A model generated the notes under the pieces. That model was given only the letters and a program-made list of their open reading frames with translations. It was not told the DNA's origin and ran no database searches. From Vitrella brassicaformis CCMP3155 (lineage: Eukaryota; Protista; Chromerida): a stretch of 64,000 nucleotides of DNA. Location of the stretch: NCBI GenBank assembly GCA_001179505.1, contig CDMY01000266.1, forward strand, positions 62,001 to 126,000, written 5' to 3'. Of the stretch, positions 20,101 to 24,289 are shown one piece after another. Position numbers and translations under genes: made by a program. Numbering within the stretch: the first letter of the stretch is position 1; every line of letters begins with the position of its first letter.

Positions 20101-21050
20101 TGTGTTTCTTGCCGATGACGTCCTCCTCGCTCTCCACCGACGCACCGTCAGACTGCCCACCGAACTGCAGATGAATGGACGTCACACACATGCACCCACA
20201 GCACACACAGACATTCGTCCTCTCATGTGACTCGTGTGAGTGTGGGCGGTCGCTCACCGGTTTGTCGGCGGTGCGCGTATCTTGGTGGTATTTGTCGCGC
20301 ATCGCGTTGGCCATGAGGGTATCCAGGTGTGTGCCGTTGAGGGGGGGGGGTGGGGGAGGCGCCGCGTCCTCATGCTCATCTTCCACCTGCAACTCGTCCT
20401 CTTCCCTGCCGCAGACAGACAGACAGACAGACAGCATCCACACGTGGGCATCTTCTGCTTCTGCAGCTTGTGTGGATCGGGTGAGCTCACTCACCTGTTG
20501 TGGTCGTGGCCCGCCACGCTGTCGTATATCTCCCGAGCGTTCACCCCCAACATGAGCACATCCAGGTCGCCACCCTCACGCTTCTCCACCTGCCATAACA
20601 TCACAGACAGACAGACAGACAGTCAGAAAGTCAGACTCATGCATCTATGTGTGTGTGGATCCATCCATGTAAGTGCGTGTGGGTACCTCTTCTTTGAGCC
20701 CTCCCCACTCGCCTTCGTCGTAGGCGTACCGTCTGTTGGGGCTGGAGAGGATGCTGTACGCCCGGGCCAGGGCGCTGAACTCGCCCTCGTCGCCCGCCGA
20801 GCCATCGGGGTGGCACCTACACAACCCATCCAACCAACCAGACCCACAGAGATCACAAATGCGTGTGTGGAGGGGCTCGGACAGACACACACACGCCTCA
20901 CACACCCGCATGCATCTGTGCCCCTGGCTGAGTGTTCCGGGCCCTCACTTGGTGGCTCGCTCCTTGTAGGCCTCCAGTATCTCCTCGGTCGATGACCACC
21001 TGTCAATGCCCAGTGCGGTGTACAAGCAAAAGCGCTCGTGGTCATCCATC
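17129..21050 (-). CDS. J-domain (DnaJ class C) protein with a very long acidic region, many exons
   Basis: MDDHERFCLYTALGID...EAYKERATK|CHPDG...FSALARAYSILSSPNRRYAYD, with an intact HPD. D/E-rich exons follow, and the last exon reads LNELHREEMRG...EEEDEEE* (stop 17129-17131). Confidence 0.8.
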
Positions 21051-21131
21051 TTCTCAGTTGAGCTTGCCGTCAGGCCGCCTAGGGCGCTCCCTGAAACCGC
21101 TGCCCAGTTCGCCAAATCAGGGCAGCAACAC

Positions 21132-23609
21132 ATGCTCCTTGCCAGTCATCTACTGCTGCTGCTGTCCGCATCGCCACAAACCACAATTATTCGACACTCA
21201 TCATCGCCATCTCTCCGCATGTCGATGGCATCATCGTCCCCATTCCGCTACGTGTACCTGCACGGCTGGCTGAGCGGCCCGCAGAGCTTCAAGGGCACCT
21301 TCTTGAAAGACAAGCTCAGCCCCCTCGGTATCGACTTGCAACTCATCGACCTCAACAGAGGGAAGCCGCCGGGCCAGATGACGTATGACGGGGCGCTGAT
21401 TGCCGTCGATGAGGTGTGGGAGAGGGAGGCGGGGGCACATGGCGAAGGGGAGGTCAAGCTGCGGCTGATCGGGTCATCGCTTGGCGGCTACTTCGCTGGT
21501 CGGTGGGTGGATCTGCGTGTGTGTGTGTGCGTGTGTTGCCATGCATCCGTCCATCCATCCATCGAGTGCTCTCTGTGTGTGCTGTGTGTGTGAATGTCAG
21601 CGCGCTATGCGGAGCTGCATCCCAACCGTGTGGACAGGATGGTGCTGCTCTGCCCGGCCTTCGACTTCCACAACCAGTTCAGAAAACTCACAGGAGAGGT
21701 ACACACACACACACACACACACACCCCTCTGACTTCGTCTGTCTGTCTGTCTGCCAGAACACAGTGTTCGGCCCGCCTGACATGGACGGATGGCAGTCGG
21801 CGGGCAGCCGCCCCTTCCCGATGCCCGACGGCTCTCTGGTCGACGTCCCCTTCTCGTTCGTCGATGGCGCGCGGGGCCACCACGCCTTCCCGCTGTACCT
21901 CTGCCCCACCACCATCATCCACGGGCTCGACGACGAGATCATCCCCGTCGACACCACCAAACAGTTCTGGGAAACGGTGAGTCAGTTGCCGAGTGACGTG
22001 AATGCCTGCCTGGGTCGATGGATGTCCATGCTGTTCTCTGTCTGTCTGTCTGTGTGTGTGTGTGTGTGTCTGTGTGTGTCTGTGTGTCGGTCGGTCGGTC
22101 GGTTGATCAGCACGAGGATCAGGGTGAGGTGACCTCTCTGCTGCTGGTGCCCGACCAACACGCCCTCACGGCCCCCAACACCCTCTCCCTCACACTCAAG
22201 ACCATCACCGACTTCTTCAGACTCTCTCACACAAACAAGCAGCAGCAGCAGCAGCAGCAGCAGGATCAGGCCCCCCCACCAGCAGCAGCAGCAGCAGCAG
22301 TCGCAGCAGCAATGATAGAAGTAGAGCGCAAGTTTCCGATGCTGGACGAGAGCGACCTGGAGAGGGCGATAGAGAGGGAGGGGGGGCAGCTGGTGGGCGA
22401 GCAGGCTTTTGTCGACACCTACTTCGACTGGGAGGGGTACCCCCTGACGCTGCACAACTGCTGGCTCAGGAGACGGGCAGGGCTCTGGGAACTCAAGACA
22501 CCGAGGGGCGTTACGGTATGCATGCTACTGGCCCACTGTGTGTGTTTTGTGTGTGATCGATGTCATGTGTGTGCTGATTGATTGACAGAAGGAGGGCGGC
22601 GATCAGTACAGTGGTCATGAGGGGGAGGGCAGGCTCGCCATATTCGAGGAAGAGCTCGATGAAGACAAAATAGTCCAATACCTCAAGGTAGTGTGTGTAG
22701 AGGGATACATGGGTGACGACCCACACACACATTCACACACACACTGTATCTGTGTGTTCTTCTCACACAGACTCACTTTGCTGACCACATGACTTCCGAC
22801 GACCTCAAGACAGCCGTCGCCGAGGAGACCCCAGGCGGCGGAACACGAGCCGGGCTGCAGGCCTTCTGCCACGTACACAAGCGCACGTGTCACACGCAAA
22901 GATCCTGGTGGTGACGTGTGTGATGCATGTGTGTGTGTGTGTACTAGTATGGCACGAACCGGCGCAAGTATGTGGCGGGCGACCCAGCTATCACCATTGA
23001 TGTCGACTCGGCGTCATTTGGCTACGGGTGAGTGAGCGAGCGAGTTGGTGAGATGGACAGACAGAAACAGCCCGCCCATGGACATCTGTGTGCAAATCAA
23101 TAGGTGTGTTGAGCTGGAGCGCATGTGTGTGTCCGACGAGGAGACGGCCGCAGCCACACGGGACATCGACAGCATGGCCAAGCGACTCAACCTGGCCTCA
23201 TCTATCGCCCAAACAGGCGAACACGCCCCTGCGCCTCAGTCAGCGCCCCAGCCGTCCGCGGACGGGCGCAAACTGTCTTTGGGCCTGCCTTCCAGCGGCC
23301 CCCTGTCGCTCGGCATACCGCTCAGAGGAGAGCCCGAGAGCCCCCCACCAAGGTACACCACACACACAGAGAGAGAGAGAGAGGGAGATTGCTGTGCGTG
23401 TGCAGTCGTTGATTGCCTCTATGCTCTTCTGTGTGTTGTGATTGTGCGCATGTGTCTGCAGGGGTGTGGGAGGTGGGCTGCCTTTGGGTTCGCAGGGCGG
23501 CCCGCACCGGGCGGCCATGTCGGTGCAGCGCGGCAAGCTGGAGGAGTGGATAAGGAGATACTCGCCGCAGCACTTCGACCTCCTCAAAGACGCCAAGATA
23601 TTCCAATAA
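21132..23609 (+). CDS. Fusion: YqiA/UPF0227-like alpha/beta-hydrolase (esterase) plus CYTH-domain thiamine-triphosphatase-like domain
   Basis: Hydrolase motifs YVYLHGWLS, LIGSSLGG, HGLDDEII and DQHAL. Exon 22111-22515 continues without a stop through a polyQ/polyA linker into MIEVERKF..DTYFD..WLRRR..WELK. Later exons give RRKY..ITIDVDSASFGY, CVELE and GKLEEWIRRYSPQHFDLL..*. Confidence 0.85.
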
Positions 23610-24289
23610 CCTAGGAATGCGATAGACAGACAGACAGAGAGACATGTAGATGAGTAGGGATGGATGGACATGACATGCGGCTGGGGCTAGCTATTCTCTG
23701 CCATGGGTTGTTTGTTTTTTTGCGGGATGGGATTATCCCGCAGCCTAGGCCTCCCTCGCTGTTTTTCTTATGGAATGGGGAACGGGTACGTGTGATACAT
23801 GTACCATATGAGAGCGAGGGTAGGGGAGTTGTGCGTTGATGATTGGTCTCAGTCGGTTTGTGTGAGTTTTGCAGCTGAAGGGATGGATGGATGGATGGAT
23901 GGACACACAGACAAGCGAGGGAGGCAGGTAGGGTCTCTCTTGGTTCTCCATTGTCTGTGGCGTGTTTTGAGTGAGTCTGTGTGCGTCTCCATTTGACTAG
24001 TGTGTAAGTCTCTTGTAAAGGGGGTGTGTTAAACTAGATGTTAAAGGCACATGGAGCTGAATTCTGTCGGTACTGTCAACAATCCTTCACTTGAATGCAA
24101 CCAAGGAAAGCGGCAGAACGCCTGCCGCCGCACCGCCCCTGCGCGAGCTTGAAACGATCTTGTGGCTCCAGAAAGGAGTCATCGGATGAGCCGCTGTGTG
24201 CATGGTGATGCTGATGGGCTGATACCTCTGGATCCAGACGCAGCTATCTGCCGTGATCTGTCGTGATCTGCCCGTTGCGAGGCAGATCA

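What the first reader, a model, noticed from the sequence alone, without database searches (positions are those of the whole stretch)
21132..23609. In-frame fusion of a YqiA-like esterase and a thiamine-triphosphatase-like CYTH domain
Seen: exon 22111-22515 carries the hydrolase's catalytic-His segment (DQHAL), a Q/A linker and the CYTH signature EVERKF (ATG 22312) with no stop. Both domains look catalytically complete. Known: THTPA-type CYTH enzymes and YqiA-type esterases are normally stand-alone. Inference: a bifunctional enzyme that might link an orphan esterase to thiamine or polyphosphate metabolism. The N-terminus (MLLASHLLLLLSAS + S/R-rich) may target it to an organelle. I know of no described example.
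Basis: partly seen in the sequence, partly recalled or inferred. Interest (0 to 1): 0.75.

Follow-up and report, generated by a model that had tools for sequence, protein, structure and literature searches.

The report
Esterase fused to thiamine-triphosphatase-like enzyme
This alga (Vitrella brassicaformis) has one gene, made as one spliced mRNA, that joins a small serine esterase to a thiamine-triphosphatase-type enzyme; the same join occurs in brown algae and several other algal groups, is already in public databases, and has never been studied.

Summary
Window 21132-23609 (+) is a nine-exon gene. Exon 4 (22111-22515) is one open frame holding the esterase's Asp-x-His segment, a (CAG)n/(GCA)n-encoded Q/A linker and the CYTH start MIEVERKF.

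An intronless 2222-nt transcript contig (L003) matches window 21125-24057 with all eight introns removed. So esterase and CYTH are on one mRNA.

The public protein CEL98256.1 (Vitrella brassicaformis, 559 aa, "CYTH domain-containing protein") equals this model from ATG 21219.

The fusion is not unique. Homologous esterase+CYTH proteins occur in:
- brown algae, Chrysoparadoxa, Tribonema and Nannochloropsis;
- a chlorarachniophyte, with an extra SET domain;
- Euglena longa;
- uncultured eukaryotes, one as an intronless single ORF.

Across 12 aligned fusions both catalytic sets are invariant. These are the esterase's Ser87/Asp185/His216 and the equivalents of mouse ThTPase E7/E9/K11, Y39, W53, R55/R57, K65, D147 and E157/E159.

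The CYTH half is closest to mammalian ThTPase. The esterase half belongs to Pfam UPF0227 (YqiA/YcfP) but is not a YqiA equivalog.

I found no paper describing this architecture. Substrates and organelle targeting remain inferred.

Verdict: a real, conserved, uncharacterised two-enzyme fusion, new to the literature but not to the databases. Moderate interest.

The parts
21125..24057 (+). Extent of the mRNA as seen in the intronless transcript contig L003 (5' end at least at 21125; 3' UTR 23610-24057)
   Evidence: blastn of L003 against the window gives nine colinear 100%-identical blocks with the eight introns removed. L003 comes from JGI sample 3300017297.
21132..21218 (+). Possible N-terminal extension of 29 codons (MLLASHLLLLLSASPQTTIIRHSSSPSLR), in frame with and upstream of the database start ATG 21219
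   Evidence: ATG 21132 is nt 8 of the transcript contig and is the first ATG in it. The public model starts at 21219. Its use as a start and any targeting role are inferred.
21219..21498 (+). Exon 1 from the database start: HG oxyanion motif (YLHGWLS) and nucleophile elbow GSSLGG (Ser87 codon 21477-21479)
   Evidence: Pfam UPF0227. H15, G16, G85, S86, S87, G89 and G90 are invariant in 12 fusions.
21601..21698 (+). Exon 2: esterase core strand and helix after the nucleophile (ARYAELHPNRVDRMVLLCPAFDF)
21758..21976 (+). Exon 3: cap insert and the catalytic Asp loop IIHGLDDEIIP (Asp185 codon 21932-21934)
   Evidence: Aligns to the HGxxDExVP loop of ABHD10 6ny9. D185 is invariant.
22111..22515 (+). 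Exon 4: the junction exon. It holds the esterase C-terminus with Asp214-x-His216 (His codon 22159-22161), the linker, and the CYTH N-terminal third
   Evidence: Single open frame. Pfam CYTH. ThTPase alignment. 100% match to P0001 residues 200-334.
22240..22311 (+). Q/A linker encoded by (CAG)8...(GCA)n microsatellite; predicted disordered
   Evidence: Sequence. pLDDT below 50 for residues 241-266. Linkers of other fusions differ in length and sequence.
22318..22332 (+). CYTH signature E-V-E-R-K (E269, E271, K273 of P0001, equivalent to mouse ThTPase E7, E9, K11)
22589..22687 (+). Exon 5: CYTH strand with invariant Glu355. The neighbouring, otherwise near-invariant Tyr is Phe353 here
22771..22872 (+). 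Exon 6: CYTH helical insert
22948..23027 (+). Exon 7: strand ITIDVDSASFGY (D419 and D421, equivalent to mouse D145 and D147) and R406
23104..23352 (+). Exon 8: metal-binding VELE (E431 and E433, equivalent to mouse E157 and E159), a helix, then a P/S/G-rich insert shared in the 12-protein alignment only with P0005
   Evidence: pLDDT below 50 for residues 466-531. The role of E157/E159 is stated in PMC7456500.
23462..23609 (+). Exon 9: end of the insert, the conserved C-terminal helix RGKLEEWIRRY, and stop TAA 23607-23609
   Evidence: G535 and K536 are nearly invariant. Helices 536-554 are confidently modelled.

Best explanation
Window 21132/21219-23609 is a single nuclear gene of Vitrella brassicaformis. 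It is spliced from nine exons into one mRNA and encodes a two-enzyme protein of 559 aa from ATG 21219, or 588 aa from ATG 21132.

The N-terminal ~240 residues are a small Ser-Asp-His alpha/beta-hydrolase of the UPF0227 (YqiA/YcfP) family, with Ser87, Asp185 and His216. A ~25-residue disordered Q/A linker follows. Then comes a triphosphate-tunnel (CYTH) domain of the thiamine-triphosphatase subfamily.

It belongs to a conserved family of esterase-CYTH fusions found in algae with secondary plastids: ochrophytes, a chlorarachniophyte, a euglenid and this chromerid. The CYTH tree is consistent with a single origin of the fusion.

Most likely working (inferred): the two domains are independent hydrolase sites on one polypeptide.
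- The CYTH half uses the Glu pairs (E269/E271, E431/E433) to hold Mg2+/Mn2+. It uses the Arg/Lys tunnel (K273, R319, R321, K328, R406) to bind a triphosphate. It cleaves the terminal phosphate with the Tyr303-Lys328 pair. The conserved Trp317 (mouse Trp53) favours thiamine triphosphate as substrate.
- The esterase half cleaves a carboxyl- or thio-ester that is still unknown.
- N-terminal hydrophobic or presequence-like extensions in Vitrella and most relatives suggest delivery to an organelle, plastid or mitochondrion. That is where thiamine triphosphate is known to accumulate in plants.

My odds: real single-gene fusion 0.95; both sites active 0.75; thiamine triphosphate as the physiological substrate 0.4; organelle targeting 0.45.
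For: Shown, one mRNA:
- L003 is 2222 nt and intronless. It is colinear with 21125-24057 with all introns removed and encodes the 559-aa protein in one ORF.
- The public protein P0001 (CEL98256.1) is identical to the hand-derived exon model.

Shown, domain identities:
- Pfam on P0001 gives UPF0227 at 42.8 bits (cut-off 21) and CYTH at 33.8 bits (cut-off 23.2).
- By PDB sequence search, mouse ThTPase scores E 3.5e-12 and ABHD10 scores E 2.3e-5.
- The AlphaFold2 model has mean pLDDT 75.6 and pTM 0.78. By Foldseek its CYTH half matches mouse and human ThTPase at target-normalised TM-score 0.77-0.86, E 4e-15. Its esterase half matches small esterases including ABHD10 at target-normalised TM-score about 0.7.
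- In the ESM Atlas, residues 6-240 match bacterial YqiA/YcfP clusters at target-normalised TM-score 0.87-0.93 (the ortholog P0007 gives 0.88-0.94).

Shown, conservation:
- Homologous esterase domains (E 1e-31 to 1e-61) lie upstream of CYTH in Laminaria, Discosporangium, Undaria, Scytosiphon, Ectocarpus, Chrysoparadoxa, Tribonema, Nannochloropsis, Amorphochlora and Euglena longa, and on environmental eukaryotic contigs.
- One of these is an intronless 475-aa ORF on a 575-kb eukaryotic contig.
- Catalytic residues of both domains are invariant in 12 aligned fusions.
- All 20 fusions fall in one well-supported (SH-aLRT 95) 36-row clade of the CYTH tree.

From the literature:
- Trp53 stacks on the thiazole ring, and Tyr39/Lys65 form a catalytic dyad (PMC8615392; PMC8233210).
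- E157/E159 bind the essential metal, and thiamine triphosphate accumulates in plastids and mitochondria of Arabidopsis (PMC7456500).

Inferred, targeting: N-terminal extensions with hydrophobic segments occur in Vitrella, the P0016 group, Amorphochlora, the euglenid-like P0025 group (two hydrophobic segments) and several brown algae.
Against: - No enzyme assay exists for any member, so substrates are unknown. CYTH relatives with similar motifs hydrolyse inorganic triphosphate, and plant TTM1/2, which also carry the Trp, prefer pyrophosphate (PMC8233210).
- The otherwise near-invariant Tyr next to Glu355 is Phe in Vitrella.
- The transcript is a short-read assembly. Another assembly of the same locus, P0002, is a chimera, so assembly artefacts do occur here.
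- No targeting predictor could be run. The database model starts at ATG 21219 without the extension. The Vitrella extension is short and has no Phe after the hydrophobic stretch.
- A few short, non-fusion CYTH proteins sit inside the fusion clade. A single origin is therefore consistent with the tree but not proven.
- No inter-domain confidence map or coordinates were available, so nothing can be said about contacts between the two active sites.
Confidence: 0.75

Rival explanations
1. These are two neighbouring genes, an esterase and a ThTPase starting at ATG 22312, wrongly merged by gene prediction because a CAG microsatellite happens to keep the frame open.
For: The Met at 22312 aligns with the very start of mammalian ThTPase (mouse residue 5). 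The CAG/GCA linker is open in all frames by nature.
Against: - The esterase frame has no stop codon before the CYTH domain.
- One intronless transcript contig spans both halves.
- The same join is found in at least 20 other proteins with unrelated linkers, one of them an intronless single ORF.
- The Met is not conserved at that column in the other fusions.
Confidence: 0.03
2. The fusion is real, but a separate stand-alone CYTH protein is also made from the same locus, by an internal promoter or by initiation at Met267 (ATG 22312).
For: There is an in-frame ATG exactly at the domain start. The MMETSP ORF P0002 carries the CYTH half without the esterase.
Against: - P0002's first 118 residues map to another contig (C929:96237-96808). 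They join this gene inside a shared CAG run, so P0002 is an assembly chimera and not an isoform.
- The internal Met is not conserved.
- No transcript start was seen inside exon 4.
Confidence: 0.1
3. The CYTH half is a general inorganic triphosphatase, polyphosphatase or NTPase, not a thiamine triphosphatase. In that case the fusion has nothing to do with vitamin B1.
For: Tripolyphosphatase is regarded as the ancestral and most widespread CYTH activity (PMC8615392). Plant TTM1/2 carry the Trp yet prefer pyrophosphate (PMC8233210). ThTPase activity has so far been shown only in animals.
Against: - The best sequence and fold matches are mammalian ThTPases.
- The equivalents of Trp53, Tyr39 and Lys65 are invariant in the fusion family.
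Confidence: 0.35
4. The esterase half is a non-catalytic scaffold or regulatory module, a pseudo-enzyme.
For: No substrate is known for any UPF0227 member in eukaryotes. Pfam UPF0227 covers only profile positions 2-106 of 187.
Against: The HG oxyanion motif, the GSSxGG elbow, Asp185 and Asp214-x-His216 are invariant across 12 distant fusions. That pattern is what selection on catalysis would give.
Confidence: 0.07

Closest known systems
Mammalian 25-kDa thiamine triphosphatase (THTPA; PDB 5a64, 5a65, 3bhd, 3tvl, 2jmu)
   Same: It is the best sequence match (E 3.5e-12) and the best fold match (target-normalised TM-score 0.77-0.86). Conserved features are EXEXK, Asp37/Tyr39, Trp53, Arg55/Arg57, Lys65, Asp145/Asp147, Glu157/Glu159 and the C-terminal helix.
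   Different: THTPA is a stand-alone cytosolic protein of about 225 aa, known from animals. Here the domain is the C-terminal half of a 559-588-aa protein in an alga. It carries a 65-residue disordered insert before the last helix and has Phe in place of a near-invariant Tyr at position 353. Its activity is untested.
YqiA/YcfP esterases (Pfam UPF0227, PF05728; E. coli YqiA; PDB 4fle, 9bi7)
   Same: UPF0227 is the top Pfam family, above its cut-off. The HGF/WxS start and GSSLGGY elbow are the same. Bacterial UPF0227 clusters of 212-232 aa match residues 6-240 at target-normalised TM-score 0.87-0.93.
   Different: It is not a YqiA equivalog: NCBIfam gives 20 bits on exon 1 against a cut-off of 252, and no hit for the whole protein. 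It is longer than the roughly 190-200-aa YqiA-type chains because of a cap insert (residues ~116-165). It is fused to another enzyme.
ABHD10 (mitochondrial acyl-glucuronide esterase, as titled in PDB 6ny9; S-depalmitoylase activity is from my own knowledge)
   Same: It is the closest solved structure by sequence for the esterase half (E 2.3e-5, residues 81-232 against 94-243). The Asp loop HGxxDEIVP is alike. Foldseek target-normalised TM-score is 0.68.
   Different: Identity is only about 20%. ABHD10 is single-domain. Nothing shows a shared substrate.
Described multidomain CYTH proteins (CYTH-CHAD YgiF; plant TTM1/2 kinase-CYTH; HD and exopolyphosphatase fusions)
   Same: In each, a CYTH domain is joined to a second domain acting on phosphate or nucleotide compounds (PMC8233210).
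   Different: None of the listed partners is an alpha/beta-hydrolase. Here the partner cleaves esters, not phosphoanhydrides, and sits N-terminal to the CYTH domain.

Membership tests
CYTH / triphosphate tunnel metalloenzyme superfamily (PF01928) | Profile match above Pfam's gathering score | tested here: met
   P0001 scores 33.8 bits against a cut-off of 23.2, residues 267-458 to profile 1-169. Exon 4 alone scores 23.1 bits.
CYTH / triphosphate tunnel metalloenzyme superfamily (PF01928) | N-terminal EXEXK motif | tested here: met
   E269-V-E271-R-K273, at 22318-22332. It is invariant in 12 fusions.
CYTH / triphosphate tunnel metalloenzyme superfamily (PF01928) | Eight-stranded beta-barrel tunnel fold | tested here: met
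   The predicted model (strands 268-436) superposes on ThTPase crystal structures at target-normalised TM-score up to 0.86. This is a prediction, not a solved structure.
Thiamine triphosphatase subfamily (THTPA) | Trp53 equivalent (thiazole stacking) with Arg55/Arg57 | tested here: met
   W317, R319 and R321 are invariant. Their role is described in PMC8233210 and PMC8615392.
Thiamine triphosphatase subfamily (THTPA) | Tyr39-Lys65 catalytic dyad and Glu157/Glu159 metal site | tested here: met
   Y303, K328, E431 and E433 are invariant. Their roles are described in PMC8615392 and PMC7456500.
Thiamine triphosphatase subfamily (THTPA) | Specific hydrolysis of thiamine triphosphate | not testable with these tools
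   This needs an enzyme assay.
Thiamine triphosphatase subfamily (THTPA) | Stand-alone ~25-kDa single-domain protein | tested here: not met
   The domain is the C-terminal half of a 559-aa fusion.
UPF0227 (YqiA/YcfP) alpha/beta-hydrolases (PF05728) | Profile match above Pfam's gathering score | tested here: met
   The score is 42.8 bits against a cut-off of 21, but it covers only profile positions 2-106 of 187. Abhydrolase_1 and Hydrolase_4 score nearly as well.
UPF0227 (YqiA/YcfP) alpha/beta-hydrolases (PF05728) | Ser-Asp-His triad in the canonical order with a GxSxG elbow | tested here: met
   S87 in GSSLGG, D185 and H216 are all invariant.
UPF0227 (YqiA/YcfP) alpha/beta-hydrolases (PF05728) | Whole-domain fold match to family members | tested here: met
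   Atlas models of bacterial YqiA/YcfP clusters match residues 6-240 at target-normalised TM-score 0.87-0.93. Both sides are predicted models.
Esterase YqiA proper (NCBIfam NF008291 equivalog) | Score above the equivalog cut-off (252 bits) | tested here: not met
   Exon 1 scores 20.3 bits. The whole protein gives no hit at E <= 0.001.
Esterase-CYTH fusion family of algae (database-only, unnamed) | Homologous esterase domain directly N-terminal to a THTPA-type CYTH domain on one polypeptide | tested here: met
   phmmer with each half of P0001 finds both halves in order in at least 20 non-identical proteins. Alignment A1 shows 32-41% identity over both halves.

The most novel reading that the evidence does not exclude
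Algae with secondary plastids share an organelle-targeted bifunctional enzyme. Its THTPA-type half removes the thiamine triphosphate that plastid or mitochondrial ATP synthases make. Its esterase half acts on a linked, still unknown (thio)ester. If so, specific thiamine triphosphatase would not be an animal invention, and this would be the first candidate organellar ThTPase of phototrophs. The fusion would then be a 'Rosetta stone' assigning the orphan YqiA/YcfP esterases to thiamine or phosphate metabolism.
Probability: 0.25. Interest if true: 0.65.

Novelty: new variant of a known kind. Interest (0 to 1): 0.4.

Why it matters
The physiological role of thiamine triphosphate is an old open question. 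Reviews treat specific ThTPase as an animal acquisition (PMC8615392). In plants the compound accumulates in plastids and mitochondria (PMC7456500).

A conserved algal protein that keeps every ThTPase signature residue gives a concrete, testable candidate. It often carries an organelle-type presequence and is welded to an orphan esterase family (YqiA/YcfP). Conserved fusions usually mean that the two activities serve one pathway.

Against this, both domains are ordinary members of known folds. The proteins are already in public databases with their domains auto-annotated. Nothing about the mechanism is unusual. So this is a useful lead, not a surprise.

Tried and rejected
- Word search with exon 4 found nothing. 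Its length window of 74-236 aa cannot see the roughly 500-aa relatives, so the blank means nothing.
- Word search with the whole P0001 returned only itself and P0002 among 8000 scored candidates, probably because of its poly-Q/poly-A words. I repeated it with an alignment that omits P0001.
- The bacterial promoter/terminator scan is irrelevant for a eukaryotic gene and found nothing beyond chance.
- P0002 (MMETSP Transcript_5697) at first looked like evidence for a separate CYTH transcript. I rejected it: its N-terminus maps to contig C929 and the junction lies in a CAG run common to both loci.
- 'ABHD10-like rather than YqiA-like' was considered. I softened it after the Atlas structure matches to bacterial UPF0227 clusters. 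Both statements hold at different levels.
- Other THTPA-type proteins with CYTH at residues 230-630 (molluscan and environmental) were checked for the esterase. They have none, and no Pfam domain at all in their N-terminal parts.
- Own-genome scans found no second CYTH or UPF0227 locus. This is only a lower bound, because the scan works exon by exon.
Exons were searched one by one by reference. The only joined sequences used are the ones the tools returned: P0001 and the transcript contig L003.
Full report
**What is there**

The window belongs to a 72.7-Mb, 1064-contig eukaryotic genome. The protein look-up identifies it as Vitrella brassicaformis CCMP3155.

Reading the three forward frames across 21050-23700 gives a nine-exon gene with GT..AG introns rich in GT/TGTC repeats:
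- E1 21132 (or 21219)-21498
- E2 21601-21698
- E3 21758-21976
- E4 22111-22515
- E5 22589-22687
- E6 22771-22872
- E7 22948-23027
- E8 23104-23352
- E9 23462-23609 (TAA)

Each exon was searched by reference. The joined sequences used below are the ones the tools returned.

**Check of the observation**

Exon by exon, Pfam finds UPF0227 in E1 (E 1.6e-6, above the cut-off). It finds the first 60 positions of CYTH in E4 (E 7e-5).

E4 is one 135-codon open frame. It contains ...LLVPDQHAL..., then KQQQQQQQQDQAPPPAAAAAAVAAA, then MIEVERKF (ATG 22312).

PDB sequences align E4 residues 64-133 with residues 2-69 of mouse and human thiamine triphosphatase (E 3e-7). E7 (DPAITIDVDSASFGY) aligns with ThTPase 140-154. 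E3 carries the HGxxDEIIP acid loop and aligns with ABHD10.

One caveat. The linker is a CAG/GCA microsatellite, which has no stop in any forward frame, so its openness alone is weak evidence.

**Is it one gene?**

Yes, on four lines of evidence.
- The exhaustive representative search with E4 returned P0001. This is a 559-aa public protein (CEL98256.1, UniRef A0A0G4EN47, 'CYTH domain-containing protein'). It is identical to my exon model from ATG 21219.
- Its look-up gave L003, a 2222-nt JGI contig with no introns. blastn shows it colinear and 100% identical with window 21125-24057, with all eight introns removed at exactly the boundaries above. One mRNA therefore carries esterase and CYTH, with a 3' UTR of about 450 nt.
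- ATG 21132 is nt 8 of that contig, in frame and 29 codons upstream of the database start. The hydrophobic extension MLLASHLLLLLSAS... is therefore inside the known transcript. Whether it is translated is not shown.
- A second public ORF, P0002 (MMETSP), has the CYTH half behind an unrelated 118-residue N-terminus. That part maps to contig C929, and the junction lies in a CAG run present at both loci. P0002 is an assembly chimera, not an isoform.

**Is the architecture unique?**

No. In the same search, ten full-length representatives and two fragments matched across both the esterase C-terminus and the CYTH N-terminus. Further checks:
- Pfam confirms UPF0227/Abhydrolase plus CYTH in them.
- phmmer with each half of P0001 finds both halves in order (esterase E 1e-31 to 1e-61) in at least 20 non-identical proteins.
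- Named sources are Laminaria digitata, Discosporangium mesarthrocarpum, Undaria, Scytosiphon promiscuus, Ectocarpus fasciculatus, Chrysoparadoxa australica, Tribonema minus (truncated model), Nannochloropsis oceanica, Amorphochlora amoebiformis and Euglena longa.
- One environmental member is an intronless 475-aa ORF on a 575-kb contig whose neighbours are plainly eukaryotic: RCC1/BTB, TFIIH, a protein kinase and ribosomal protein L2. There the fusion does not depend on any splicing model.
- In a CYTH-domain tree of 97 rows, all 20 fusions fall within one well-supported (SH-aLRT 95) 36-row clade. The label needs only three changes, against a shuffled mean of 12.9. This is consistent with a single origin plus losses or truncated models, but does not prove it.
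- No large ESM-Atlas cluster has the architecture, so the family is small.

**What the two halves are**

CYTH half:
- The best sequence relative is mammalian ThTPase (E 3.5e-12).
- An AlphaFold2 model built on the 12-protein alignment has mean pLDDT 75.6 and pTM 0.78. It is disordered only in the linker 241-266, a loop at 333-348 and the insert 466-531.
- The model matches ThTPase crystal structures at target-normalised TM-score 0.77-0.86, E 4e-15.
- From the alignments, the mouse residues map as follows. E7/E9/K11 map to E269/E271/K273. D37/Y39 map to D301/Y303. W53 maps to W317. R55/R57 map to R319/R321. K65 maps to K328. D145/D147 map to D419/D421. E157/E159 map to E431/E433.
- All but D419 (nearly invariant, 90% or more) are invariant across the 12 fusions.
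- The literature assigns Trp53 to thiazole stacking and Tyr39/Lys65 to a catalytic dyad (PMC8615392; PMC8233210). It assigns E157/E159 to the essential metal (PMC7456500).
- Vitrella departs in two ways: Phe353 stands where the others have Tyr, and a 65-residue P/S/G-rich insert precedes the conserved C-terminal helix.

Esterase half:
- H15-G16, G85-S86-S87-x-G89-G90, D185 and D214-x-H216 are invariant.
- UPF0227 is the top Pfam family, at 42.8 bits.
- Atlas models of bacterial YqiA/YcfP clusters (212-232 aa; Myxococcota, Acidobacteriota, Cyanobacteriota) match residues 6-240 at target-normalised TM-score 0.87-0.93.
- It is not an equivalog of E. coli YqiA.
- The nearest solved structures are ABHD10 and cinnamoyl/feruloyl esterases.

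**How it probably works (inferred)**

There are two independent hydrolytic sites on one chain, joined by a flexible linker.
- The tunnel domain binds a triphosphate through its Lys/Arg ring and two Glu-held metal ions, and removes the terminal phosphate. The conserved Trp points to thiamine triphosphate, but inorganic triphosphate or another substrate is not excluded.
- The esterase cleaves an unknown carboxyl- or thio-ester.
- Most complete models carry N-terminal extensions with hydrophobic segments. Vitrella has 29 aa from ATG 21132. The P0016 group has MRRFFLLMLLSNL. Amorphochlora has a signal-like stretch followed by an Arg/Ser-rich stretch. The euglenid-like P0025 group has 136 aa with two hydrophobic segments. 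Several brown algae have MRKWGLIVAAG...GFVLP.
- From my own knowledge, these resemble the presequences used for complex plastids. No predictor could be run, so this stays a hypothesis.
- It fits the report that thiamine triphosphate accumulates in plastids and mitochondria of Arabidopsis and depends on the proton-motive force (PMC7456500; PMC8615392).

**Comparison with what is known, and novelty**

Reviews list HD, exopolyphosphatase, nucleotidyl-kinase and CHAD as partners of CYTH (PMC8233210). They treat ThTPase as an animal acquisition (PMC8615392). My paper searches found no description of an alpha/beta-hydrolase-CYTH fusion.

The proteins themselves, including this one, are already in public databases with both domains auto-annotated. 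I therefore rate it a new variant of a known kind: real, conserved and uncharacterised, of moderate interest.

**Limits**

- No assay, localisation or long-read data exist.
- The transcript evidence is a short-read assembly.
- Absence from Chromera, dinoflagellates, diatoms or primary algae was not tested.
- The scan had noted the same stretch in an overlapping window (s1-233312), with no follow-up.

Noticed in passing
window 20940-21049 (minus strand): A divergent gene starts at ATG 21049 on the minus strand. Its product begins MDDHERFCLYTALGIDRWSSTEEILEAYKERATK, which looks like a J-domain. That is only 82 bp from ATG 21132, so the two genes must share a very short bidirectional promoter region or have overlapping 5' ends.
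   Followed up: no
P0002; G000:C929:96237-96808 (L006, L008): MMETSP ORF Transcript_5697 is a chimera. Residues 1-118 come from a three-exon gene on contig C929 (...LWMVGMDGPAWQQQQQQQ). The rest is exons 4-9 of this gene. The two are joined inside a shared CAG run. This is a warning for transcript assemblies across microsatellites in this genome.
   Followed up: yes
P0151 (Amorphochlora amoebiformis, 947 aa), P0005 (1351 aa), P0033 (884 aa): A sub-clade of the fusions carries a third, C-terminal region of about 400 aa. Pfam SET was confirmed in P0005 and is listed in the precomputed domains of P0033. P0151 aligns over the same region but was not scanned. The result is esterase-CYTH-SET triple fusions.
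   Followed up: partly
P0041 (Patella caerulea, 557 aa), P0054 group (Pomacea-like, ~594 aa), P0039, P0043, P0050, P0059, P0097, P0102, P0140: Many THTPA-type CYTH proteins, some molluscan, have 230-400-residue N-terminal regions with no Pfam domain and no similarity to the esterase. They form their own cluster in the CYTH tree. THTPA-type domains are therefore less strictly stand-alone than assumed.
   Followed up: partly
window 23215-23352 and 23462-23560 (P0001 residues ~466-531): A P/S/G-rich, predicted-disordered insert lies between the CYTH core and its conserved C-terminal helix. It is absent from all but one (P0005) of the aligned relatives.
   Followed up: partly
window 22634-22636 (P0001 Phe353): The Tyr two residues before the invariant Glu355 is Phe in Vitrella, although it is Tyr in all 11 other aligned fusions. 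By my own count it corresponds to mouse Tyr79; no tool alignment covers that stretch.
   Followed up: no
window introns 21499-21600, 21699-21757, 21977-22110, 22516-22588, 22688-22770, 22873-22947: The introns are short (59-134 nt) and dominated by (GT)n, (CA)n and (TGTC)n tracts. This is the same habit another first-stage note recorded elsewhere in this window.
   Followed up: no
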